Below are positions 15,225 to 64,000 of a DNA stretch of 64,000 nucleotides, piece after piece. Within the stretch, counting starts at the first letter, position 1. Every line of letters begins with the position of its first letter. The position numbers and the translations under genes were made by a program. Origin of the DNA: Heptranchias perlo (Eukaryota); the NCBI RefSeq assembly GCF_035084215.1, contig NW_027138451.1, positions 186,001 to 250,000 of the forward strand, written 5' to 3'. The notes beneath the pieces were generated by a model. The model saw only the letters and a program-made list of their open reading frames with translations. It searched no databases and had not been told where the DNA came from.

Positions 15225-18200
15225 ATGGGATATCCAGTAATCCAACAGATAGAACGCATTTATTATCCTGTTCTTGCAGCCTTCGGAGTTCCGGGTAAGC
15301 CGTTTACCTCAGCTGTTAATGGTGTAAATTGATGACTCTGCTGCTGTACTTAGCAATTTATTTTCTCCCTGCATGTTTTACACAGTCGCCTGTTCTGTTC
15401 TATCTACTGAATGAAGGAATGTGTTAATTCTCTGCACTTTCAGTAGTGTAGGAGTGTCATTATATCTGTATTGACCTTTGTATGTCCAGCCGTGGCGTTG
15501 TTACTGGATAATTGTCTGTACTGAATGTTGTGTAATGGTATGTCCATAGATTCTAAACGTTCGGTCTTGTAATAGTTACATCATATCCTTAGTGACCTTT
15601 GTGTATCCAACTCTACCATTGTGACTGGGTTATTCTCCACTGAATGTATTGGAATCAGGTGTCTGGGCAAAGAGCTGGTATCAGACCATCAGAAGTTGTT
15701 AACAGTTTAATGCTGTAGAACTATCCTGTCCTGGAATATTTTTTCATTACTATGTTTTCAGTGATTGATTATGAGACAGCTCAGCGTCTCAGTGTTACAT
15801 GGAGGCAGTGCAATATCCTCCCTCCCCAATAATATGCTTCAGTTAAACTGGGATTACATTGTATTTATTGGTTAGGACTGTTGTGAAATATTATTTCATT
15901 ATGTGTGTATCTGACGCCGCTTCAGATGTCTGGTTACTGAACTGAGTTTGCTGCTGACACTTTCACATCTCCTCCTCCGCTTCACTGTGGATAAATTCAC
16001 GGACTGTCACTGGACTTCACTGTAAAATGAAAAGTTTTGAGGTTATGTTGTATCAGTTTGCACTGTACCAATTGGAATCAAGAGCCCTTCTTTTTATCTG
16101 TAGATTATAAGTATGATGTTGGCATTTTGTTAATTGAACAATCCCACCATCTAACACTTTACTTTATAATTACAGGAGAAGGAATCTCAATTATTGTGAA
16201 ATCTGTCTGGAAGAGGCATTTGATTCTGTCTTTTCCATGATTTGTAGATGAAGTGAACAGTGTAGGTGAACAGGTGGAGACTTGAATGATCTGTCGGAAC
16301 ATTAAACTGTTCAACAGAGGCATCACTATTTAACAAACTGACACTGAGAATAGGATCGGTGCAACAAGTGGATGGTGAGCAGAATGCAAGGGCAGGATGA
16401 TAGGATTTAATCGGATATGAAAATGAAGTTGAGAAGGAGATTAGAGTGAGTGATAGAGAGGGCGACTGAGAGGGAAAGCGAGTGGCTGTGGTGTGAATAA
16501 TTTATCAGAATGAACTGTTGAAACTTCTAGTACATTTAAACATAGAGAGTGTAACTTGAAGGTGTTATTATGATGTTGTCAGTTTGGGCGAGTTTTGATT
16601 CTAGGACTCGCTCCTCATGTTTATATCACTGTCAGGTCCTCACTCCGTTTTCGTGAATGTTCCTTGTTTCCCAACAAATCTCTGAACATAATTAAAATTT
16701 ACTTAAAGAATAGAATCTGTAATTTCGTCATCGCATTGGATTATTCGGATACTGCAGTTTTAAAGCTCGGAAGGATTCAATAAAAAACAAGGTCGATTTA
16801 ATTAATACTTTTAAATTTAATTTTAATTGAATGTACAAAGTAATGTTAATTAACACATTTTTTTACCCAACACATGTTCCCTGACACCAATAACCACAGA
16901 AATGAACTGTTAACTCTCCGAGTTGGATTGTGTTATTGGGACTTAAAGATTAGATTTCCTCTAACGCTCTGCTGCAGTCTCTCCATGTGAATCCCAGCCT
17001 CTCCTCCCACTGCAATTGAATCATCTGTCTCCTCATCAGTTGCTTCAGTTGATCAACATTCCCAAACCATCTGCTCCTGACTCCCCTCCAGCTCCGACAT
17101 GTTATTTTCCTTATCTGCTTCCCAATCTCACTCACTGGCTCGGTCTCCAGCTGCCTTTCCCGTTTACTGCCAGCCTCTATCGGCTGTCTTAACCCAGAGC
17201 AACAAACCAGCCGCATATCTTCCTGTCCCCTCATCTTCCCGACATTCGCTCCATTTCCCGTCCGTCTAGAGGCCAAATCCGGCTTTAATGCGCTCTATTC
17301 CTACTCGGTAAAACCCCTTCTTCCTTCACCACCGACACTGCGCCCTCACTCGGCCCTTCCAGTGGACACGGTGCTCACTTTGTTCACTTTCTGTATCGAT
17401 TTCCCAATTCATTTCTCTGCCCGGAAACGCTGCCCAATTCAATTAACTAGTTTCCACCGTTCGATGCAGCAAGAAAGCGGGAAATTTCACCCCAGATCCT
17501 CCCAAACTGCTGCTTTGGCTCCAAGTCTGATCAGTAATTTCCCCGCTTTCTTTTCTCTCTCTCTTACAGTTAACTTGGTGGCGATTGTGATTCTGTCCCG
17601 AGGAAAGTGCGGTCTCTCCAAATGTATTGGTCGCTATCTGTTGGCAATGGCAGTGGCCGATCTCCTGGTCGTTACAGCTGGTGTGATATTGAGGTGGATT
17701 GGTGCGATTTATTTCCGAGGTTCATTCCTGTTCATTACTCCCGTGTGTAGTTTTATTATTTTCTTGAGTTATGCAACCGGGGTTGTTTCTGTTTGGTTAA
17801 CAGTCGCTTTCACCTTTGATCGATTTGTGGCCATTTGTTATGAGAAGCTGAAAATTAAATATTGCACTGAGAAAACGGCGGCTGTGGTTCTGGGAACAGT
17901 GAGTGTTCTGGGCTGTTTAGAGAGTCTCCCCTGGTACTTTACATATGAACCTGGAGTTATAATGCATAATGTTCCCCTGGGTTGCATGCTTAAACTGAGC
18001 TACCTTACTTCCCCTGCATGGGCCGCATTTGACATGTTTCACCTCACTTTAACTCCTTTCCTTCCGTTCTGTCTGATTTTGCTGCTCAATGCTCTGACAG
18101 TCAGACGTATTTTAATCTCCAGTCGAGTCCGCGGGGGATTCCGCAGCCGGAGCAATGGAGAGATTCACAAGGATCCAGAGATGGAGAACCGAAAGAAATC

Positions 18201-18507
18201 CATCATTTTGCTCTTCAGTATATCGGGCAGTTTTATTGTGTTATGGTTGCCACGGGTTGCATTTTACATTCATCTGCGAGTAACAGACATTCGGTATTAT
18301 TACTCCTACACTGACCCTGTTTATATCACAGAAAACACATCAGTTATGCTGCAGCTTCTCAGTTCCTGCACAAACACGTGTATTTATGTCCTGACCCAGA
18401 CTAAATTCAGAGAGGAGCTGAAGAACGCGGTAAAATACCCACTCAATCTAATTGTTAAATTAGTGAGATCACAGAAAGAGCTGAAGGGTTTCAAGCAGGA
18501 GAACTGA
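15225..18507 (+). CDS. Class A orphan GPCR, GPR139/GPR142-like; 2 coding exons (15225-15294, 17570-18507), 335 aa, intact
   Basis: Exon 1 MGYPVIQQIERIYYPVLAAFGVP+G|gtaagc; exon 2 follows ctcttacag (phase 1) and gives VNLVAIVILSRGKCGLSKC. 70+938=1008 nt in frame. Seven hydrophobic segments; motifs LAMAVADLL, WLTVAFTFDRFVAIC, FIVLWLP, SSCTNTCIY. Confidence 0.92.
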
Positions 18508-18809
18508 ATCCCATTTCAGACTCCATCCTCAACACTTCCCAGGGGACGGAAAGTACATTTTAAATTAGCAGCACAGAGCCATGAAATGATCTTAAATCGG
18601 ATTCTGATGTTATATTTTATTGATTATCTGATATATTGAGGCAGGATTTGCTTTGCAGACAACATTTGAATTGTTGATCAAGATGGCAGCATTAAACAGC
18701 TCAAATGTACTTATCCTAAATGACCGCCCTGCAAAATGGGCAAATCTGGCAATCAAAGTAGCTGCGGTGGGCCTGATCGGAATCGGTGCACTCCACGTAA
18801 GTGGTGATA

Positions 18810-19400
18810 TAGAGAGACAGAGAGAGGGAGAGGGAGAAAGTGAGAGAGACAGATATACAGAGGGAAAGAGAGAAACAGAGAGAGAGAGAGACGAATCGAG
18901 ACACAGAGAGACAGGGGGAGAGAGAGACAGGGAGTGACAGGGAGAAAGCGAGAGAGACTCGAGAGACTGAGGGATCGCGAGACAGAAAGAGAGACAGTTG
19001 CAGAGGCATAGAGAGAAAGAGAGTGATAGATAGAGAGAGAGACGGGGGTAGAGGGAGAGACGGAGATAGAGAGAGAGGGAGAGGCAGAGAGACAGACGGA
19101 CAGAGAGTGAAAAAAGAGAGAGACACACATACAGAGAGAAAGAAAGACAGAGTGAAACAAGAAGAGAAAACAGGACCGATATTATAAAATTATAATTTGA
19201 CGCTTATTTTTTTTTTGGTTTACTGCACATGAACACACCATAACCAAAAAAAAAGAGAAAACAGGGAAAAAGAAAGCCAGACTGAGAGGGAGAGAGAGAA
19301 AGACCAAGAAACAGAGAGATAGTGGGAGCGGTGGCAGAGAAAGAGGTAAGCCGAGAGAGTAAAACAGAGCATGAGAAGGAGAGAGAGAGAACCAGAGGGT
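18810..19400. repeat. (GA)-rich low-complexity tract
   Basis: Degenerate agagag/gaca repeats; purine-rich + strand. Confidence 0.9.
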
Positions 19401-19609
19401 TGGGTATGGAGACCACTAGTGAAATGGTCAGTTGCAGGTGCCGTATAATGCTTCAAAATATAATCATTTTATAATCCCCCTATATGTAATTCCCTCTCTA
19501 TAATTATGGGTTTAAATTTATCCCGACCAACATTTCTCACCTGACTTATGGGAATGAACTTTCTTGATCTCCGGCCGTCGAACATTCCTCCCGTAGTGAT
19601 CACATAAAT

Positions 19610-20445
19610 GGAATCATAGAATCTTACAGCGCAGAAGGAGGCCATTTGGCCCATCGTGCCGGTGCCGGCTCTTTGAAAGACATATCCAATTAGTCCCACA
19701 CCCCTACTCTATTCCCATATCCCTGCAATTTTCTCCCATTCGAGTATGTATCCAATTCCCTTTTTAAATTTACTATTGAACCTGCTTCCACCACCCTTTC
19801 AAGCAGTTCTTTCCAGATCCTAACAACTCGCTGCGTAGAATAAAGCCTCCTCATCTCCCCTTGGTTTTTTTGCCTATTATCTTAAATCTGTGAAAATTGA
19901 TAACCGCCTCTCGGACCAATGGAAACAGTTTCTCCCTATTTATTCCATCAAAATCCCTCAGAATATTGAACAGCTCCATTAAATCTCTCCCTAACGTTCC
20001 CTGCTCTGCGGAGAACAATCCCAGCGTCTCCACTTTCTCCACATAAAAGCAGTTCCTCATGCCTAGTACCATTCTTGTAAGTATCTCCTGCACCCCCTTG
20101 AAGAACCTGACGTCTTTCCTAAAGTGTGGTGCCCAGAATGAGGCATATCGGGTGATTGATGAAGGTTTAGCATAAATTCCTTGTTTTTATACTCTATGTC
20201 TCTATTTATAAAGCCAGTGCTTTTTAATGAGACTTATCAATCTGTCCAGCCGCCTTCAAAGTTGTGTGTACCTAAACCCTTAGTATTCTGTACCTACAAA
20301 ACTTTTAAAATTGTACCATTTGTTTTATATTGCCTCTCCCCATTCTTCCTACTAAAATGCGTCACTTCACACTTCTCTGCATTAAATTTAATCGGCCAAA
20401 TGTCTGCCCATTTCACCAGTCTGTCCATGTTCTCCTGAATTCTGT
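19610..20445 (-). mobile_element. CR1 3' fragment
   Basis: VETLGLFSAEQ..., HRFKIIGKK; aatcatagaatc tail at ~19612. Confidence 0.85.
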
Positions 20446-20508
20446 TTCAATTATCATGTAATTGAATTGTATAGAACTACCCCTGCAGGATATTCACTGC
20501 TGCTTCTG

Positions 20509-20509
<1 letters not shown>

Positions 20510-20548
<39 letters not shown>

Positions 20549-21194
20549 CTGTGTGTGTGTGTGTGTGTATGAGAGAGAGAGAGCGGAAGAGAAAGAAAGG
20601 AAGAGAGGGAGGCATGGAAAGGAGGAGACACAGTTACACAAGGGGACATAATAAAACAGGCAGGCAGAAAGTGAAAGTGAGAGAATGGGAGAGTCAAAGT
20701 CAGAAACAGATATAGAGATAGAGGGAGAGATAATAGGGAAGAGAGAGACAGAAAGGAAGAGAATGAAAATGCATAATAATAATCAGTGACTAAGGAGGAG
20801 AAAGATAAAGACAGAAAAAAAAACATGAGAGGCCACTAGAAAGACATAAAGACAGAGAGAGATATTGCCGGAGAAACAAACAACGATAGTCAGAAATAAA
20901 CACAGAAAGGAAAAAGCATGAAGTGAAGAAACAGAGGGAAGGCAGCACGTGGGCCAGAGAAAAGAAGTGATATGGAGAGAGACAAAAATTAAAATAGAAA
21001 GACACGGAGAGAGAACACAACGACAAAAGAAATATAATGATCAAAATACAAAGAAAATTAAGACAGATTCACATAAAAGGCGGGGGGGGGGCAGTCTGTG
21101 TGAGTGAGATCGAATCAAAGAGGGGCAGAGATGGAGAAAAATAAGGAGATTTATTAAGACAAGAGAGAAAAATAAAGGAAGAAAAAAAGCGGAG

Positions 21195-21225
<31 letters not shown>

Positions 21226-22075
21226 GTGTCAGAGAGAGAGAGAGAACGCACTCATGAATGGAACCAGAGAAAGGTACACTGACGAGGAATTACAACGTGC
21301 TAGAATCGGAGAGATAAATAGACAGAAGAAATCAATTCAAAATAACCAGAGACTGATAGGGAGGCAGAGGAGGAGAGGGACAGACATGAAGTAAGACAGC
21401 AAGAGAGAGAAAGAAAGAGGACTAGAAAGCAAGGAGAAAATAGAAAACAGAAGAGAGGAGGAGAAATACGACAATTCAAACCGAGATTGAAAGAAATGGA
21501 ATGAAATACAGAACCAGATGAAAAGAAGAGATCAGGAAGTCAACTCGCAACAGAAAGAAAGAAGTAGACAGAAACAGAGCTGGAGAGAGTGGGACATAAA
21601 CAGAATGAAATAAAGACGGATGAAAAAAGGGAGAAGGAAGAACGAGGTAGAGAAAAGGAAAACGGAAAAGTAGATACACAGAGAGAAACAAAGAGCGAGA
21701 TAGACAGAGGGAACAAAAAGAGAGAGATGGATACGGAGAGAGAGGTGGAAAGATAAAAAGACGGATGAAGTCAGAGAGAGGGAGAGACAACGAGGGAAAG
21801 GGGCAGGGAAGCTGATGTGAAAAAAGACAGAGAAGGCAAAGAGAGAAGATAGGCAGCGTCATGCAGACAGAGAGAGAGGCGCATAGAAAAAAGCCAAGAA
21901 TGACAGGAAGAAAAAGATAGAGATACAAACAGTACCAGAGAGACAGAAATTAAAGTAGAAGTGTAAAAAACAAGATTGAAAAACACACAGGAGATAAACG
22001 GAGATAAACGATATACACAGAGGACAGACACGTAGAAACATGAACAAAGATATAACGTGACAGCAAGGTAGAGGC
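20510..22075. repeat. (GT)n microsatellite followed by a ~1.5-kb purine-rich low-complexity tract containing (TA)n at ~21194-21224
   Basis: Direct inspection. Confidence 0.9.
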
Positions 22076-25809: not shown

Positions 25810-27320
25810 GGCTTTGTAATGGTCAGAGAGGTTGGGTGGGCTTTGTAATGGAGAGAGACATCAGGAGGGCTCTGTAATGGACAGGGAGTATCAAATAGGA
25901 TCTGTTGTGGGTCGGGGGGTGGATAGTTGTGTCTGGTGCGCTGTAATGTGCAGAGAGGATGTGCTGTCGTCTGCAATGGGGGAGGGGGAGGATTACATGG
26001 GCTCTGTAATGGACAGGGAGGATCAGATTGCCTCTGTAATGGGCGGGAGGATCAGATGGGCTCGGTAATGGACAGCAAGGATCAGGTAGGCTCACTAAAT
26101 GACAAGGGGGATTTGGCCGGCACTGTAATGGGTTGGGAGGATCAGATGGGTTATGTAATAGGCGGGGAGGATCAGATGGTCTCTGTAATGGGCGGGGAGG
26201 GTCTGGTGGGCTCTGTGATGGGCATGGAGGATCGTGTGGGCTCTGTAATGGGCGGGGAGGATCAGGTGGGCTCTCTGATGGGCGGGGGGATCAGGTGGGT
26301 TCTGTAACAGGCAGGGAGGATCAGATGGGCTCTGTAATAGGCGGGGAGGATCAGGTGGGCTCTGTAATAGGCGGGGAGGATCAGGTGGGCTCTGTAATAG
26401 GCAGGGAGGATCAGGTGGGCTCTGTGATGGGCGGGGAGGATCAGGTGGGCTCTGTGATGGGCGCGGAGGATCAGGTGGGCTCTGTAATAGGCGGGGAGAA
26501 TCAGGTGAGCTCTGTGATGGGCGGGGAGAATCAGGTGGTCTCTGTGATGGGCGGGGAGGATCAGGTGGGCTCTGTGATGGGCGGGGAGGATCAGTTGGGC
26601 TTTGTAATAGGCGGGGAGGATCAGGTGGGCTCTGTGATGGGCGGGGAGGGTCTGGTGGGCTCTGTGATGGGCGGGGAGGATCAGGTGGTCTCTGTGATGG
26701 GCGGGGAGGGTCTGGTGGGCTCTGTGATGGGCGGGGAGAATCAGGTGGGCTCTGTGATCGGCGGGGTGGATCAGGTGGTCTCTGTGATTGGCGGGGAGAA
26801 TCAGTTGGGCTCTCTGATGGGCGGGGGCATCAGGTGGGTTCTGTAATAGGCAGGGAGGATCAGGTGGGCTCCGTGATGTGCGGGGTGGATCAGGTGGGCC
26901 CTGTGATGGGCAGGGAGGATCAGGTGGGCTCTGTAATGTCGAGGGAGGATCGGTTTGCTCTGTTGTGAGTGGGATTATTGCCGAGCTTTTTGTGAGGTGG
27001 GAGGAAGGGCGGGCTCTGTGTGTGTGGGGAGCATTTGTGGGCTCATTTCTGAGGGGGAATATAGCCGAGCTCTGTTATGGGGGGAAGGGCAGCCTCTGTA
27101 GTGGGGACAGGGTGTGGGCTCTGTTGTGGAGGAGGGGATATTGATGGGCGGGTTCTGTTGTCGGGGGGGGGGAGTGGGCTATGTTGTGGTGGGGGTGTTG
27201 TTGATAGGCGGACTCTGTTGTGGTGGGAGGTGGTATTGCTGGGCGGGCTCTGTTGTGGGGGGGTCGTTGATGGGCTCTGTTGTGGGCGGGGGCGGTTGAT
27301 GGGCGTGCTCTGTTACCGAC
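25810..27320. repeat. 30-bp G-rich minisatellite (core ~25990-26940, degenerate flanks)
   Basis: Unit gggcggggaggatcaggtgggctctgtgat; produces the GGEDQVGSVM repeat ORF. Confidence 0.95.
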
Positions 27321-28434: not shown

Positions 28435-29050
28435 GGTATTGGAAGGGGAGGATTTGAAGACGGGAAACTCAAACGAAACATCACCTCAAGCTCTGACAGA
28501 GTCTCTCCATTCATCAGGACCTGAATATTAGCGGCCTTTGAATGTGGAAGGTGAATTGTTTGTCTGGTCTGTCTGTGGGAAGAGATTTCAAACATCAGTG
28601 TGACTGGAAAAGCACCGAGACACACACACCCGAGTGAGAGTGTTCCAGTGCATTGACTGGGGGAAGAGATTGAACCAGTCACAGAGCCTGAAAAAACATC
28701 GCACCATTCACAGCGGGGTGAAACCGTGCACGTGTTCTGTGCGTGGGCGAGACTTCAGCTGATCGTCCAACCTGGAGAGACACATGGACACCCGCACCAT
28801 GGAGAAACCGTGGAACTGTGGGCCTGTGGGAAGGGATTCAATGACCAGTCCCAGCTGGAAACTCATCGACGCAGTCACACTGGGGGAGATCGTTCACATG
28901 TTCCATGTGTTGAAAAGGATTCACTCTGTCATCCCATCTGCTTACTCACCAGCGAGTTCAAACTGAGGATAGACTGTTCGTCTGCTCCATGTGTGGGAAG
29001 GAATCACTAATTCATCCAAACTACTGAAGCACCAGCGAGTTCACTTATGA
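28435..29050 (+). pseudogene. C2H2 zinc-finger pseudogene, copy 1 (~6 degenerate fingers)
   Basis: CGKRFQTSV*LEKH; KKHRTIHSGVKPC; MEKPWNCG/CGKGFNDQSQLETHRRSHTG; HQRVHL*. Multiple stops and frameshifts; acceptor ccatttgcag at 28434. Confidence 0.88.
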
Positions 29051-30960: not shown

Positions 30961-31035
30961 GAACAGAACTCCGGCCAAGCAACAGAATCGGTAACAATCG
31001 AACTTTCAATTTGCCAATTGAAATAAAGGGCTCAG

Positions 31036-31828
31036 GCGGCGGGTCACTCCGGGTCTCAGGTTTCTGATAGGGGACAGAGCGGCGGGTCGCTCTGGGTCTC
31101 AGGTTTCTGATAGGGGACAGGGCGGCGGGTCGCTCTGGGTCTCAGGATTCTGAAAGGGGAAAGGTCGGCGGGTCACTCTGTGTCTCAGGTTTCTGAAAGG
31201 GGACAGGGCGGCGGGTCACTCCGGGTCTCAGGTTTCTGAAAGGGGACAGGGCGGCGGGTCACTCTGGGTGTCAGGTTTCTGATAGGAGACAGGGCGGCGG
31301 GTCGCTCCGGGTCTATGGTTTCTGATAGGGGACAGGGCGGCGGGTCACTCCGGGTCTCAGGTTTCTGAAAGGGGACAGGGCGGCGGGTCACTCCGGGTCT
31401 CAGGTTTCTGATATGGGACAGGGCGGCGGGTCACTCTGGGTGTCAGGTTTTTGAAAGGGGACAGAGCGGCGGGTCGCTCTGGGTATCAGGTTTCTGAAAG
31501 GGGACAGAGCGGCGGGTCACTCCGGGTCTCAGGTTTCTGAAAGGGGACAGGGCGGCGGGTCACTCTGGGTGTCAGGTTTCTGATATGGGACAGGGCGGCG
31601 GGTCACTCTGGGTGTCAGATTTCTGAAAGGGGACAGAGCGGCGGGTCGCTCTGGGTATCAGGTTTCTGAAAGGGGACAGAGCGGCGGGTCACTCCGGGTC
31701 TCAGGTTTCTGAAAGGGGACAGGGCGGCGGGTCGCTCTGGGTGTCAGGTTTCTGAAAGAGGACAGAGCGGCGGGTCACTCCGGGTCTCAGGTTTCTGAAA
31801 GAGGACAGAGCGGCGGGTCGGCTCCGGG
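31036..31828. repeat. 43-bp GC-rich minisatellite, ~18 copies
   Basis: Unit ggcggcgggtcactccgggtctcaggtttctgaaaggggacag. Confidence 0.95.
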
Positions 31829-32089: not shown

Positions 32090-32990
32090 GACAGAGATCG
32101 AGGACCGGGGATCGATACAAACCACGATGGGGTGGGGCGGGGGTGGGGGGGAGATAGAGTGCGAGGGCCGGGGATCGATACAAACCAAGGGGGTGGAGAT
32201 TGAGAGCTAGGGCCGGGGATTGATACAAACCACGGTGGTGGAGACAGAGAGCGAGGGTAGGGGATCATTGCACACCCCGGGGGGGTGGAGATAGAGAGCG
32301 AGGGCCGGGGATCATTGCACACCCCGGGGGGGGGGGGGGGTGGAGATAGAGAGCGAGGGTCAGGGATCAATGCAAACCCCGAGAGGTGGAGAGAGTGAGC
32401 GAGGGTCCGGTATCAATGCAAACCCCGAGAGGTGGAGATAATGAGCGAGGGTCGGGGATCAATGCAAACCCCGAGAGGTGGAGATAGTGAGCGAGGGTCG
32501 GGGATCAATGCAAACCCCGAGAGGTGGAGATAGAGAGCGAGGGTCGGGGATCAATGCAAACCCCGAGGGGTGGAGATAGAGAGCGAGGGTCAGGGATCAA
32601 TGCAAACCCCGAGGGGTGGAGATAGAGAGCGAGGGTCAGGGATCAATGCAAACCCCGAGAGGTGGAGATAATGAGCGAGGGTCGGGGATCAATGCAAACC
32701 CCGAGAGGTGGAGATAATGAGCGAGGGTCGGGGATCAATGCAAACCCCGAGAGGTGGAGATAGAGAGGGAGGGTCGGGGATCAATGCAAACCCCGAGGGG
32801 TGGAGATAGAGAGCGAGGATCGGGGATGAATGCAAACCCAGAGGGCTGGAGATAGAGAGCGAGGGTCGGGGATCAATGCAAACCCCGAGGGGTGGAGATA
32901 GAGAGCGAGGGTCGGGGATCAATGCAAACACCGAGGGGTGGAGATAGTGAGCGAGGGTCGGGGATCAGTGCAAACCCCGAGGGGTGGAGA
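32090..32990. repeat. 46-bp minisatellite, ~14 homogeneous plus ~5 degenerate copies
   Basis: Unit gagcgagggtcggggatcaatgcaaaccccgagaggtggagataga. Confidence 0.95.
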
Positions 32991-61689: not shown

Positions 61690-63140
61690 AAGTTAGAACA
61701 CGGAAACAGACAATTAGACTCAAGCAGACTGTGTCGCCGATTGCTCTCCAAACAAACGACGAGTTCTTATCACATTTACCCACCCCTTTTCCAGATCGCT
61801 AAAACCGCTTTTCTGCCTCCACCTGTCCAATCTAATTTTGAATGTTGACATAATTTATCTATGGGTTCTCGTCTTGACCCCTCAACCACTGGAAACAATC
61901 TGTTTCTATCTACCCTGTCCCATTCTTCAATCATTTTAAATATTAATATTATATCGTTCCATAATCGAAGTTGTTCCAACGAAGAAAGGCCCAATTTTCA
62001 AATCTATCATCATATTTATATTTCCTCACACGAAGCAGCATCCTAGTCAGTCTGTGTTGTAATATTCTTCCCACAGTGTGGAGCCCAATACTGCACACTG
62101 CATTGAAGCTGCATCCTAGTCAGTAGGTGCTGTAATATTCTTCCTATTGTCTGGAGCCCATTACTGCACACGGTCTTGCAGCAGCATCCTAGTCCGTCTG
62201 TGTTGTAATATTCTTCCTATAGTGTGGAGCCCAATACTGCACACAGTACTCTAACTGAGGTCTTATTAAGGTTTTATATCGGCTCATCATCACCTATTGG
62301 GTTTTATATTATGTGCCTCTTATAATAAACCTAGAATTCCATTAGCTTTTCCATAGCATTATCAACCTGACGCGCTGCCTTTTATGTCCTGTAAACTCAT
62401 ATCCCCAAATCCCTCTGCTCTTCCACAGCACTGTGCCTACTTCCATTCAGAGTATAATTGCTACTCTTGTCTTTATAAAAATGCATCAACTCACAATTAC
62501 TGATATTGAATTCCATCTGCCACTTTTCAGTCCATTCCCCCATTTTATTAATATCCCTTTCCAGCTTCCTTTGGCCCTCTAAATAATTAACTATACTCCT
62601 ATTTTGGGATCACGTTCAAATTTCGATACCACTTTCTCCAGTCCTAGATTCAGATCATTGGTATACGTGGTGAATGGAAGTGTCCCCAGAACCGAATTCT
62701 GTGGGATATCACTACCCAATTCCAACCACTCTGAATATAGTGAGCTCTCTGAACCGAATCCTGAGGGATATTAGTACCCACTTCCAACCACTCTGAATAT
62801 AGTGAGCTCTCTGTGGGATATCACTACCCACTTCCAACCACTCTGAATATAGTGAGCTCTCTGTGGGATATCACTACCCACTTCCAACCACTCTGCATAT
62901 ATTGAGCTCTCTGTGGGATATCACTACCCACTTCCAACCACTCTGAATATAGTGAGCTCTCTGTGGGATATCACTACCCACTTCCTACCACTCTGAATAT
63001 AGTGAGCTCTCTGTTTCCTCTCTTCTAATCTCTTTTAATCCAGTTTACCCTCCTCTCCTTATTTCTATGCTCCATAATCTTGACATAATTTCCACTGTGG
63101 TAACTTGTTAAAGGCATTCTTAAAGTCCATGTATTTTGCA
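61690..63140 (-). mobile_element. Old CR1 3' half containing internal tandem amplifications
   Basis: GLSSLEQLRL..., degenerate RT motifs; internal repeats at 62035-62250 and 62699-63014. Confidence 0.7.
62699..63014. repeat. 50-bp tandem repeat, ~6 copies
   Basis: Unit ctgtgggatatcactacccacttccaaccactctgaatatagtgagctct at 62699, 62761, 62811, 62861, 62911, 62961. Confidence 0.95.
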
Positions 63141-63573
63141 AACTGGATTAATAAAGGTCCAGAGGCCACAGCGCAAACCAAACTGCAGGTCCGGTGCTAT
63201 TAATGCGGCTGATGCGAAGTTTGGGTTTCGTGGTTACCGCGGGGCGGCCGCTCCGTTTGTCACCGTAAAAAATATATAGTAGTAATTATTTGAGAGAGCG
63301 CATTTTTGCTGTTTTCGATGGGTTGAACTGCCATATAAGTGCGGATATTATTCTTAATATAGCATTAAAGTGTCACCAAATTATTACACTGGGAGAAGTA
63401 TGGAAGCACAATCGACGTGGATGCAAAGTTCCCAACAGAGTTCCCATGAAGCGTGTGCTCCATATCTCCACTGATCTCTTCATGTTAATTGGATGAAGAT
63501 TTCACTGGCGTGAGTGACTATGGATATAGGGGACATGATGCAACACATCACAAACCGCGAGCTATACTCACTG

Positions 63574-63629
63574 CTAATGGTCTCTCCCTCTGCCCTATGC
63601 AAATCAGCTCACGCTCTCGCGATTTATAA
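63574..63629 (+). promoter_or_regulatory. Ig V-gene promoter: heptamer-like CTAATGG, pyrimidine tract, octamer ATGCAAAT (63597-63604), TATA-like TTTATAA (63623-63629)
   Basis: Exact octamer 127 nt upstream of the leader ATG, in the VH-promoter orientation. Confidence 0.75.
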
Positions 63630-63723
63630 GGACGGTGCTCAGATACACACGGTTACACAGCACAGTCGGTGTTGAGGTCTGGAGTTGGCCCTGTTTAAAG
63701 TGTTCACTGCTGGTGAAGAAACA

Positions 63724-64000
63724 ATGAATATTTTCTGGGTTTCGGTCCTTTTAGCCTCGTTACCGAGTAAGTGCATTTTATTAAAGAGATTAAATATTCC
63801 TTTAATAAAACTGTGTGGCTGCCTCCAAATTGTGGAAATTTCCTTGCTTTTAACTCTTGTATTGTTTCAGAGACGCGATGTATAAAATATATTTTTCTCC
63901 ATTCAGATGCCTTCAGTGGAAGAGTAGTCCAAACACCGACAACGGCAACGAAAGAGGCAGGCGAGTGGCTGACCATCAACTGCGTCTTAACTGATTCTGG
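63724..64000 (+). CDS. IgNAR-type variable (VNAR) gene segment, partial: leader exon 63724-63766, 140-nt intron, V exon from 63907 running off the window
   Basis: Spliced translation MNIFWVSVLLASLPNAFS-GRVVQTPTTATKEAGEWLTINCVLTDS matches the IgNAR pattern MNIFLLSVLLALLP..FT-ARVDQTP...KE.GESLTINCVL. Donor A|gtaagt, acceptor ttctccattcag, phase-1 split leader, first canonical Cys present. Confidence 0.92.

What the first reader, a model, noticed from the sequence alone, without database searches (positions are those of the whole stretch)
63724..64000. Germline VNAR (shark single-domain antibody) gene with atypical FR1 residues, missed by the ORF track
Seen: splicing 63766 to 63907 gives an IgNAR-type leader and FR1 with no defects so far. 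It has GRVVQ where ARVDQ/ARVEQ is usual, and GEWLTINC where GESLTINC is usual. Established: IgNAR genes occur as V-D-D-D-J-C clusters, and related V domains are also used by NAR-TCR. Inference: this is the 5' end of an IgNAR cluster, possibly a divergent VNAR type or one from a poorly sampled shark lineage.
Basis: partly seen in the sequence, partly recalled or inferred. Interest (0 to 1): 0.8.

Follow-up and report, generated by a model that had tools for sequence, protein, structure and literature searches.

The report
Start of a sevengill-shark VNAR gene
The last 400 bases of the window hold the promoter, leader exon, intron and first 30 codons of a real, transcribed shark single-domain antibody (VNAR-type) V gene with three unusual framework residues; it is an ordinary kind of gene from a little-studied shark lineage.

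Summary
The leader exon is 63724-63766. A 140-nt GT..AG intron follows, and the V exon starts at 63907. The frame is open to the window end and reads AFSGRVVQTPTTATKEAGEWLTINCVLTDS.

The best 30 PDB rows are shark VNAR domains (best E 9.8e-9). The first other classes start at E 0.08.

Contigs of three RNA-guess runs from one animal carry the 63766>63907 joint, and the DNA run does not. Two of these contigs match the window without a mismatch.

G1, V4 and W17 of the mature domain occur in 0 of 23 VNAR comparators. Position 17 is Ser in all 23.

Most RNA depth belongs to a paralogue that reads the canonical A-R-V at this point.

A neighbouring GPCR ORF places the genome in or near Heptranchias perlo.

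IgNAR against NAR-TCR cannot be settled inside the window. An octamer/TATA promoter, an IgNAR-like leader and near-identity to a very abundant paralogue favour IgNAR.

Unchecked first-stage notes of this scan describe the same gene from the overlapping window. They also list other IgNAR clusters on other pieces of this genome.

Verdict: a new member of a known kind, of modest interest.

The parts
63597..63604 (+). Octamer ATGCAAAT, 120 nt upstream of the ATG and 19 nt upstream of the TATA-like box
   Evidence: The count in the window (5) is not above chance (3.93 expected; 34 of 100 shuffles reach 5). Only its position in front of a V gene gives it meaning. That it is the Ig promoter octamer is recalled knowledge.
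63623..63629 (+). TATA-like box TTTATAA
   Evidence: Read. RNA-type contigs begin 33 nt downstream of its end (record 13).
63662..63723 (+). 5' untranslated region, as far as RNA-type contigs reach
   Evidence: X6 record 13 covers 63662-63731 with 0 other letters. Depth is 0 in all three RNA-guess runs from 62604 to 63608. A contig end is not a mapped transcription start.
63724..63766 (+). Leader exon, coding part: MNIFWVSVLLASLP plus the first base of the next codon
   Evidence: It shares 12 of 18 leader residues with the leader of P0127, an IgNAR cDNA-like protein (V plus start of C1). The count includes the 4 leader residues on exon 2.
63767..63906 (+). Leader intron, 140 nt, GT..AG, phase 1
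   Evidence: table 5: joint 63766>63907 in X6, X7 and X8, none in the DNA run X1. RNA depth is 0 in bin 63810-63876. DNA contigs (X1 records 6 and 7) run through the intron.
63907..64000 (+). Start of the V exon: last leader residues (N)AFS, FR1 GRVVQTPTTATKEAGEWLTINC, then VLTDS; cut by the window end
   Evidence: X6 record 15 and X7 record 21 cover 63907-64000 with 0 other letters and run on 153 and 79 nt beyond the window.

Best explanation
This is the 5' part of a germline, transcribed VNAR-type variable gene segment of a hexanchiform (sevengill-type) shark. It comprises a promoter with octamer and TATA-like box, a 5' UTR, a signal-peptide exon, a 140-nt phase-1 leader intron and the first 94 nt of the V exon. 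It is most probably the V segment of one IgNAR mini-cluster.

Shown: the gene structure, the splice, the presence of exactly matching spliced RNA-type contigs, VNAR-specific FR1 similarity, and three framework residues not seen in 23 comparators.

Inferred: the signal peptide is cut after AFS (Ala at -3, Ser at -1), giving a mature end G-R-V-V-Q. The V segment is joined by RAG to downstream D and J segments and spliced to IgNAR constant exons, making a heavy-chain-only antibody.

It is a divergent and, by contig depth, weakly represented paralogue of at least one dominant gene in the same animal. That dominant gene reads F-G-A-R-V at the leader/FR1 boundary and has Trp instead of Ser in the leader.
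For: 1. Sequence: an open frame with a canonical split leader and splice sites.

2. Family: the top 30 PDB rows are VNAR-type chains. Of these, 27 are named new antigen receptor or VNAR and 3 carry generic names. The best is 7fbk_C at E 9.8e-9. The first other classes are a de novo protein at 0.081, a llama light chain at 0.086 and TCR alpha from 0.17. Identity to 23 VNAR proteins is 15-22 of 27 mature residues. The window keeps 13 of the 14 positions that are invariant in those 23.

3. Expression: the joint 63766>63907 is in 3 of 3 RNA-guess runs and 0 DNA-run contigs.
- X6 record 15 (286 nt, depth 137.8) has 0 other letters on 63907-64000. It is the only X6 contig with the joint, with 39 nt on exon 1.
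- X7 record 21 (212 nt, depth 7.25) has 0 other letters on both exons.

4. Germline rather than somatic: the DNA run holds the intron-bearing form at about single-copy depth (record 6, depth 33.9, 0 other letters; unique flank record 4, depth 32.6).

5. IgNAR rather than NAR-TCR:
- (a) An octamer lies 19 nt before a TATA-like box.
- (b) The leader is of the MNIF... family. The window shares 12 of 18 residues with the leader of P0127, which continues into an IgNAR C1-like sequence (the C1 assignment is recalled).
- (c) Transcripts sharing this 5' UTR and leader, apart from 63758 C>G, reach contig depth 37,399 of 37,537 in X6. That level fits a secreted immunoglobulin. The DNA of such a copy is about 91% identical through the intron (X1 record 7: 13 other letters and 1 gap over 150 window bases), so this gene is a recent duplicate of it.
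- (d) No V-set, C1-set or ig domain was found among 288 stop-to-stop pieces of 68 aa or more across the window.
- (e) Unchecked leads: notes on the overlapping window report D, J and a secretory tailpiece about 19.7 kb beyond the window end. NAR-TCR clusters are noted only on other pieces.

6. Precedent: bamboo shark has seven IgNAR clusters. One supplies 96% of the blood repertoire and three have pre-joined D segments (PMC8692893, passages).
Against: - Nothing downstream of codon 30 of the V exon could be read. The second canonical Cys, the FR2 Trp, the RSS, D, J and C are unverified here.
- No NAR-TCR V sequence was available as a comparator. FR1 and leader similarity therefore cannot separate IgNAR V from NAR-TCR V.
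- The octamer count in the window is at chance level.
- A zero-mismatch match over 133 nt could also come from an identical copy elsewhere in the genome.
- X6-X8 are only guessed to be RNA and their tissue is not on record.
- Contig depth is a poor measure of expression, as the tool itself warns.
- The X8 joint contig (record 28) has 9 other letters in 58 nt of exon 2, so it belongs to a paralogue and not to this gene.
- Exact-match transcripts could be sterile germline transcripts rather than rearranged mRNA.
- Pfam's general V-set model does not reach E 0.01 on the 76-aa stop-to-stop piece that holds the 30-aa fragment.
Confidence: 0.8

Rival explanations
1. It is the V segment of a NAR-TCR cassette (VNAR-type V-D-J placed in front of a leaderless supporting TCR-delta V), expressed in T cells.
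For: [quoted passage not shown] The IgH clusters are linked near TCR alpha/delta (PMC12227049, passages). Exact-match contigs have modest depth (137.8 and 7.25).
Against: An octamer/TATA promoter of the Ig kind is present. The 5' UTR and leader are nearly identical to those of a transcript of very high depth, and the intron DNA of such a copy is about 91% identical. That argues for a young duplicate of an abundantly expressed Ig gene. No TCR or Ig V or C exon was found in the 63.7 kb upstream. Unchecked notes place a secretory tailpiece about 19.7 kb downstream and place NAR-TCR clusters on other pieces.
Confidence: 0.07
2. It is an orphan or decaying V: intact at its 5' end and transcribed from a working promoter, but without a usable downstream V remainder, RSS, D/J or C. 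The RNA would then be sterile transcript.
For: Only 30 codons of the V exon are visible. An invariant Ser is replaced by Trp and the acidic/Asn position 4 by Val, which could reflect relaxed constraint. Depth is low next to the paralogue. Three of seven bamboo-shark IgNAR clusters are incomplete (PMC8692893, passages).
Against: There is no defect in the promoter, ATG, signal peptide, splice sites or frame. Correctly spliced contigs run on 79 and 153 nt beyond the window without being flagged as unlike. The window keeps 13 of 14 invariant FR1 positions. Unchecked notes describe D, J and C elements downstream.
Confidence: 0.1
3. The unusual residues are not germline. They would be somatic hypermutation or an assembly error captured from lymphocyte DNA.
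For: IgNAR V regions mutate heavily after antigen exposure (PMC4279169, passages). All runs come from one sample, so there is no independent animal.
Against: The window carries the intron and unrearranged 5' structure. Logan DNA contigs agree with the window at about single-copy depth around the gene, and one search's table of other letters lists none for X1 between 63907 and 64000 (13 rows were not shown). RNA-type contigs in two runs repeat the same letters exactly.
Confidence: 0.03

Closest known systems
IgNAR V gene segments of bamboo sharks (Chiloscyllium plagiosum VNARs P0001, P0003-P0005; C. punctatum gene fragment P0002)
   Same: They share 21-22 of 27 mature FR1 residues, including QTPTT and KEAGE, which are minority forms among the comparators. 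P0002 has the same MNIF... leader family.
   Different: The window has G1, V4 and W17 where these have E/Q, E and S. It has VLTD rather than VLRD/VLKD. The rest of the domain was not compared.
Spiny dogfish (Squalus acanthias) VNAR, e.g. 4hgk / P0128
   Same: It shares VLTD after the first Cys and 20 of 27 residues. By recalled taxonomy, Squalus and hexanchiform sharks are both squalomorphs.
   Different: P0128 has T-R-V-D-Q, PRTAT and GESLTINC. It is a humanisation-study construct, not a germline gene.
Dominant IgNAR-type paralogue(s) of the same animal, seen only as RNA-type and DNA contigs
   Same: Same 5' UTR, same leader apart from one base, same splice sites and the same start of exon 2.
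   Different: The paralogue reads Trp for Ser in the leader (63758 C>G) and F-G-A-R-V instead of F-S-G-R-V at the leader/FR1 boundary. Other contigs, with 5 other letters over 63944-63995, carry a CDR1 Cys (T-K/N-C-G-L-D-S-T). Whether these are the same copy as the 63758G contigs is not shown. Depth of the 63758G form is 37,399 against 137.8 in X6.
Partly germline-joined IgNAR clusters (nurse shark type III with fused D1-D2; bamboo shark IgNAR2, 5 and 6 with pre-joined D)
   Same: Only by unchecked notes on the overlapping window, which say this cluster has a V end joined to D and one free D. These are known minor or early-life clusters beside a dominant one (PMC4622739 and PMC8692893, passages).
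   Different: Not testable here. The reported V-D join and the D- and J-encoded cysteines lie outside this window.
NAR-TCR V
   Same: It is a VNAR-type V domain with its own leader (PMC12227049 and PMC3457774, passages).
   Different: No sequence was available to compare. The promoter type, the abundance of the near-identical paralogue and the lack of TCR V exons upstream argue against membership.

Membership tests
VNAR-type V domain (V of IgNAR and NAR-TCR) | Conserved FR1 (R/W-V-x-Q-T-P ... T-K-E-x-G-E-S-L-T-I-N-C-V-L) with the first canonical Cys | tested here: met
   The window keeps 13 of the 14 positions invariant in 23 comparators, all but Ser17 > Trp. Overall 15-22 of 27 residues are identical. 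The top 30 PDB rows are VNAR-type, best E 9.8e-9.
VNAR-type V domain (V of IgNAR and NAR-TCR) | Split signal peptide with a short phase-1 leader intron in front of the V exon | tested here: met
   A 140-nt GT..AG intron. The joint is seen in 3 of 3 RNA-guess runs and not in the DNA run.
VNAR-type V domain (V of IgNAR and NAR-TCR) | FR2 Trp, missing C'' strand / short CDR2 region, second canonical Cys in FR3 | not testable with these tools
IgNAR mini-cluster | V followed by D segments (three, or fewer if pre-joined) and one J, each with an RSS | not testable with these tools
   Outside the window. The only evidence is unchecked notes s1-883187 and s1-883222.
IgNAR mini-cluster | Five IgNAR constant exons with secretory and transmembrane tails downstream | not testable with these tools
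   Outside the window. Unchecked note s1-883348 reports a secretory tailpiece 19,718 nt beyond the end.
IgNAR mini-cluster | Ig-type promoter (octamer plus TATA) and B-cell / plasma-cell level expression | tested here: inconclusive
   The octamer at 63597-63604 and the TATA-like box at 63623-63629 are present, but the motif count is at chance level. Exact-match spliced contigs exist at modest depth, and a near-identical paralogue has very high depth. Tissue and cell type are unknown.
NAR-TCR cassette | Lies within the TCR alpha/delta V array, followed by a leaderless supporting TCR-delta V | tested here: inconclusive
   Upstream 63.7 kb: no V-set, C1-set or ig domain among 142 pieces of 88 aa or more, or among 146 pieces of 68-87 aa. 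There is no second VNAR-like piece. The downstream side, which is the decisive one, could not be read.
VNAR types I-IV | Pattern of non-canonical Cys (and Trp) in CDR1, FR2, FR4 and CDR3 | not testable with these tools
   The window ends two residues into CDR1 (VLTDS...). Type definitions come from PMC4622739 and PMC12907318 (passages).

The most novel reading that the evidence does not exclude
This V heads a distinct IgNAR subclass of hexanchiform sharks that is kept beside the canonical, dominant IgNAR. The subclass would have its own framework signature: Val4 and a solvent-facing Trp17 on strand B (the orientation is inferred from general Ig-fold knowledge). As unchecked notes on the next window claim, it would also have a V end already joined to D, a single free D, and D- and J-encoded cysteines that hard-wire a CDR3 disulfide. 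That would be a semi-invariant, innate-like single-domain antibody outside types I-IV.
Probability: 0.3. Interest if true: 0.6.

Novelty: new member of a known kind. Interest (0 to 1): 0.35.

Why it matters
IgNAR is said to exist in all elasmobranchs (PMC3149040, passages). Published VNAR work rests on a handful of species, chiefly nurse, bamboo, wobbegong, horn and catsharks and the spiny dogfish (PMC12907318, passages). No held paper links IgNAR with hexanchiform sharks.

A germline, expressed VNAR gene from this deep squalomorph branch adds a data point for how conserved the VNAR framework is. Position 17 was Ser in 23 of 23 comparators and is Trp here. It also helps with primer or library design in new species, and with how dominant and minor IgNAR clusters diverge within one genome.

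The larger questions (reduced D number, pre-joining, new disulfide type) lie in the next window and are not settled here.

Tried and rejected
**Reading the DNA beyond base 64000.** The rest of V, the RSS, D, J and C were therefore not seen.

**Protein searches with the 30-aa exon-2 piece.**
- The representative library gave 2 proteins at E up to 0.001, P0001 and P0002.
- P0002 alone gave 5 of 5 candidates, all Chiloscyllium.
- A 3-row profile including the window piece gave 23 hits of 68 candidates. None had V4 or W17, and by the names none comes from this genome.
- Length limits (46-147 aa) mean full-length IgNAR or NAR-TCR chains could not be found.

**NAR-TCR comparators.** Criscitiello et al. 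2006 (PMC1458790) is not held, and no NAR-TCR V sequence came from any search. The FR1 and leader test between IgNAR V and NAR-TCR V was therefore not possible. The 'single D in NAR-TCR' point is recalled only.

**Scans that added little.**
- The bacterial promoter/terminator scan is irrelevant to a vertebrate gene.
- The octamer count test was negative: 5 found against 3.93 expected.
- A heptamer-like CTAATGG at 63574-63580 matches the recalled VH heptamer in only 5 of 7 places. I give it no weight.
- Pfam does not see the V fragment at E 0.01.

**Rejected reading.** I considered that the unusual residues are a hypermutated or mis-assembled allele and rejected it (see rivals).

**Paper searches.** The motif search found 0 papers with GEWLTINC or GRVVQTP, and 2 with GESLTINC. 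One search (any 2 of 4 terms) listed 15 of 795 papers, none with 'Heptranchias'.

**What I saw of the papers.** I read passages by 'find' only, in PMC12227049, PMC4279169, PMC4622739, PMC12907318, PMC3457774, PMC3149040 and PMC8692893. I did not ask for supplements. Supplementary figures of PMC8692893 (cluster numbers across cartilaginous fish) and of PMC12227049 (locus maps) may cover more species than I could see.

Full report
**What is there**

The last 400 bases of the window read as the front of an antigen-receptor V gene.
- An octamer ATGCAAAT lies at 63597-63604.
- A TATA-like TTTATAA lies at 63623-63629.
- An ATG at 63724 opens 14 codons, MNIFWVSVLLASLP.
- This exon ends at 63766, in front of GTAAGT.
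- A pyrimidine-rich tract and an AG at 63905-63906 precede an exon that starts at 63907.
- From 63909 this exon reads AFSGRVVQTPTTATKEAGEWLTINCVLTDS, open to the last base.

The codon split by the intron (A + AT) would be Asn. I read that by eye and, as the operators ask, sent no joined model to any tool. The mechanical ORF list shows nothing on the + strand here, only a spurious 91-aa ORF on the opposite strand. 'Missed by the ORF track' is therefore right.

**Is it more than chance?**

phmmer of the 30 residues against PDB sequences put 30 shark new-antigen-receptor V domains on top, with E from 9.8e-9 to 0.057. Of these, 27 are named VNAR or new antigen receptor and 3 carry generic names. 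The first other classes follow at E 0.08-0.17: a de novo protein, a llama light chain and TCR alpha chains.

A profile of five bamboo-shark VNARs, searched against all 1682 six-frame pieces of 25 aa or more, hit only this piece (E 2.7e-11; next best E 2.7).

Pfam's general V-set model does not reach E 0.01 on the stop-to-stop piece that holds the fragment. This is expected, because only 30 of about 110 domain residues are present.

**Is it expressed and spliced as proposed?**

One search found four DNA-type and three RNA-guess runs, all from one sample of one coded organism. I laid X6, X7 and X8 (RNA-guess) and X1 (DNA) on 62001-64000.

The splice:
- The joint 63766>63907 (skips 140, GT..AG) is present in one contig in each of the three RNA-guess runs and in no contig of the DNA run.
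- The RNA-guess runs have zero depth in the intron bin 63810-63876, and from 62604 to 63608.
- DNA contigs run through the intron (records 6 and 7).

Which gene the contigs come from:
- Two spliced contigs match the window exactly. X6 record 15 (286 nt, depth 137.8) has 0 other letters on 63907-64000 and is the single X6 joint contig, with 39 nt on exon 1. X7 record 21 (212 nt, depth 7.25) has 0 other letters on both exons.
- These run on 153 and 79 nt beyond the window, but the tool prints no letters there.
- The X8 joint contig (record 28) has 9 other letters in 58 nt of exon 2, so it comes from a paralogue with the same splice sites.

RNA-type contigs reach 5' to 63662 (record 13), 33 nt after the TATA-like box.

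Caveats: the RNA label is a guess, the tissue is unknown, contigs cannot give levels, and an identical copy elsewhere could supply the exact matches.

**A dominant, more canonical paralogue**

At 63758 nearly all X6 depth (37,399 of 37,537, in 7 contigs) reads G for C. This turns the leader Ser into Trp, the residue that P0002 and P0126 have in their leaders.

Contigs that end on exon 1 continue with a loose end that reads, in frame, N-A-F-G-A-R-V. That is the usual A-R-V start, where this gene has S-G-R-V.

Other paralogue contigs, with 5 other letters over 63944-63995, continue T-K/N-C-G-L-D-S-T, so they carry a CDR1 cysteine.

The DNA run holds a second copy of the leader-intron region with 13 other letters and one gap over 150 window bases (record 7). 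Summed DNA depth over 63475-63943 is two to three times that of the unique flank. This is suggestive only.

This gene is therefore a divergent and, by contig depth, weakly represented member of a small family. The pattern is the one described in bamboo shark: seven IgNAR clusters, one giving 96% of the blood repertoire, three with pre-joined D segments and three incomplete (PMC8692893, passages).

**How atypical are the residues?**

A profile search returned 23 VNAR-type proteins: Chiloscyllium plagiosum and C. punctatum, Squalus acanthias, Ginglymostoma cirratum, Orectolobus maculatus and four unlabelled. Many are selected or engineered clones and several are near-duplicates, so 23 is not 23 independent samples.

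Over the 27 mature residues, identity is 15-22 of 27, and C. plagiosum is best. Fourteen positions are invariant in the 23, and the window keeps 13 of them.

Three window residues occur in none of the 23:

| Mature position | Window | Comparators (n = 23) |
|---|---|---|
| 1 | Gly | A 17, E 3, Q 2, T 1 |
| 4 | Val | D 15, E 6, N 2 |
| 17 | Trp | Ser 23 |

Position 1 is variable between species, so Gly there means little. Loss of the polar or acidic residue at position 4, and Trp for an invariant Ser, are the real oddities.

By the usual in/out alternation of strand B, with L, I and C pointing inward, residue 17 should face solvent on the A-B-E-D sheet. That is inference, not a computation.

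No held paper prints GEWLTINC or GRVVQTP.

**Which organism?**

An intronless 7tm_1 ORF lies at 17464-18504. Its closest relatives are 'probable G-protein coupled receptor 139' proteins. Of the best 20 rows, 18 are from Heptranchias perlo, at up to 78% identity, and no identical protein is listed.

The genome is therefore H. perlo or a close hexanchiform relative. This agrees with earlier follow-up notes that speak of a sevengill shark.

No held paper combines IgNAR with Notorynchus, Hexanchiformes or Heptranchias.

**IgNAR or NAR-TCR?**

For IgNAR:
- The octamer/TATA arrangement. The motif count itself is at chance: 5 found, 3.93 expected.
- The MNIF... leader shares 12 of 18 residues with P0127, whose sequence runs from leader through V into what I recognise, from recall, as IgNAR C1.
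- The 5' UTR, leader and intron are nearly identical to those of a paralogue whose transcripts reach a depth expected of a secreted immunoglobulin.
- No V-set, C1-set or ig domain was found among 288 stop-to-stop pieces of 68 aa or more in the window, which holds reverse-transcriptase debris, zinc-finger fragments and the GPCR.

Unchecked first-stage notes on the overlapping next window describe the same gene as a 'reduced IgNAR cluster' with a V end joined to D, one free D, a D- and a J-encoded Cys, and a secretory tailpiece 19,718 nt beyond my window's end. NAR-TCR clusters are noted only on other pieces. I could test none of this.

Against certainty:
- I had no NAR-TCR V comparator.
- IgH clusters and TCR alpha/delta are linked in elasmobranchs (PMC12227049, passages).
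- A single-D cassette is, by my recollection, also the NAR-TCR layout.

I put IgNAR at about 0.8, NAR-TCR at 0.07, orphan or decaying V at 0.1, and a non-germline artefact at 0.03.

**How it most likely works**

Shown: a promoter-proximal region, 5' UTR, signal-peptide exon, leader intron and V exon start that are transcribed and correctly spliced.

Inferred from established Ig biology (PMC4622739 and PMC4279169, passages):
- Oct-factor-dependent transcription in B cells.
- Signal-peptide cleavage after A-F-S.
- RAG-mediated joining of this V to the cluster's own D and J segments.
- Splicing to IgNAR constant exons.
- Secretion as a light-chain-less homodimer whose single V domain binds antigen.

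**Comparison and novelty**

The gene structure and family are textbook. What is new is the lineage and three framework residues. I class it as a new member of a known kind.

The more novel reading is a separate semi-invariant IgNAR subclass with its own framework signature. It depends on the next window and is given as the novel case.

The scan has noted this gene before from the overlapping window, and has noted other IgNAR clusters on other pieces of the same genome.

**Limits**

- I saw the papers as passages only.
- I did not ask for supplements, and they may list IgNAR loci of more species.

Noticed in passing
window 17464-18504 (+): Intronless rhodopsin-type GPCR ORF (347 aa from the first ATG; Pfam 7tm_1, E 1.2e-22). 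It belongs to a hugely expanded shark 'GPR139-like' family: 2646 proteins at E up to 1e-10 among 8000 scored candidates, best 78% identity to Heptranchias perlo. No identical protein is listed, so this copy may be unannotated.
   Followed up: partly
window 63728-63877 and 63758: A second genomic copy of the leader-intron region, about 91% identical. Transcripts with 63758 C>G (leader Ser > Trp) and a canonical A-R-V start hold nearly all the RNA depth. Other paralogue contigs read a CDR1 Cys (T-K/N-C-G-L-D-S-T).
   Followed up: partly
window 25985-26963, 31035-31819, 32145-32990: Large G-rich minisatellites: a 30-bp unit x 32.8 copies, a 43-bp unit x 18.3, and a 92/46-bp unit x 9-14. The first produces long fake ORFs of GGEDQVGSVMG-like repeats.
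   Followed up: partly
window 62202-62536: High-copy interspersed repeat just upstream of the V gene. Summed DNA contig depth reaches 14,946 against about 33 in the unique flank 63140-63407. It is also present in the RNA-guess runs.
   Followed up: no
window 18600-21950: CT/GA-rich low-complexity tract that gives many overlapping Ser/Leu-rich or Arg/Glu-rich ORFs on both strands. It lies directly after the GPCR ORF.
   Followed up: no
window 28726-29010 (+): ORF fragment with a C2H2 zinc-finger-like motif, seen by eye. Pfam C2H2 zinc-finger hits are not assigned to a piece by the tool. Reverse-transcriptase and endonuclease fragments are scattered through the window (RVT_1 in 4 pieces, Exo_endo_phos_2 in 1).
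   Followed up: no
window 63701 (run X8): One RNA-type contig starts at 63701 with a loose end that looks like a sequencing-adaptor remnant. This is a library artefact, not a transcript feature.
   Followed up: no
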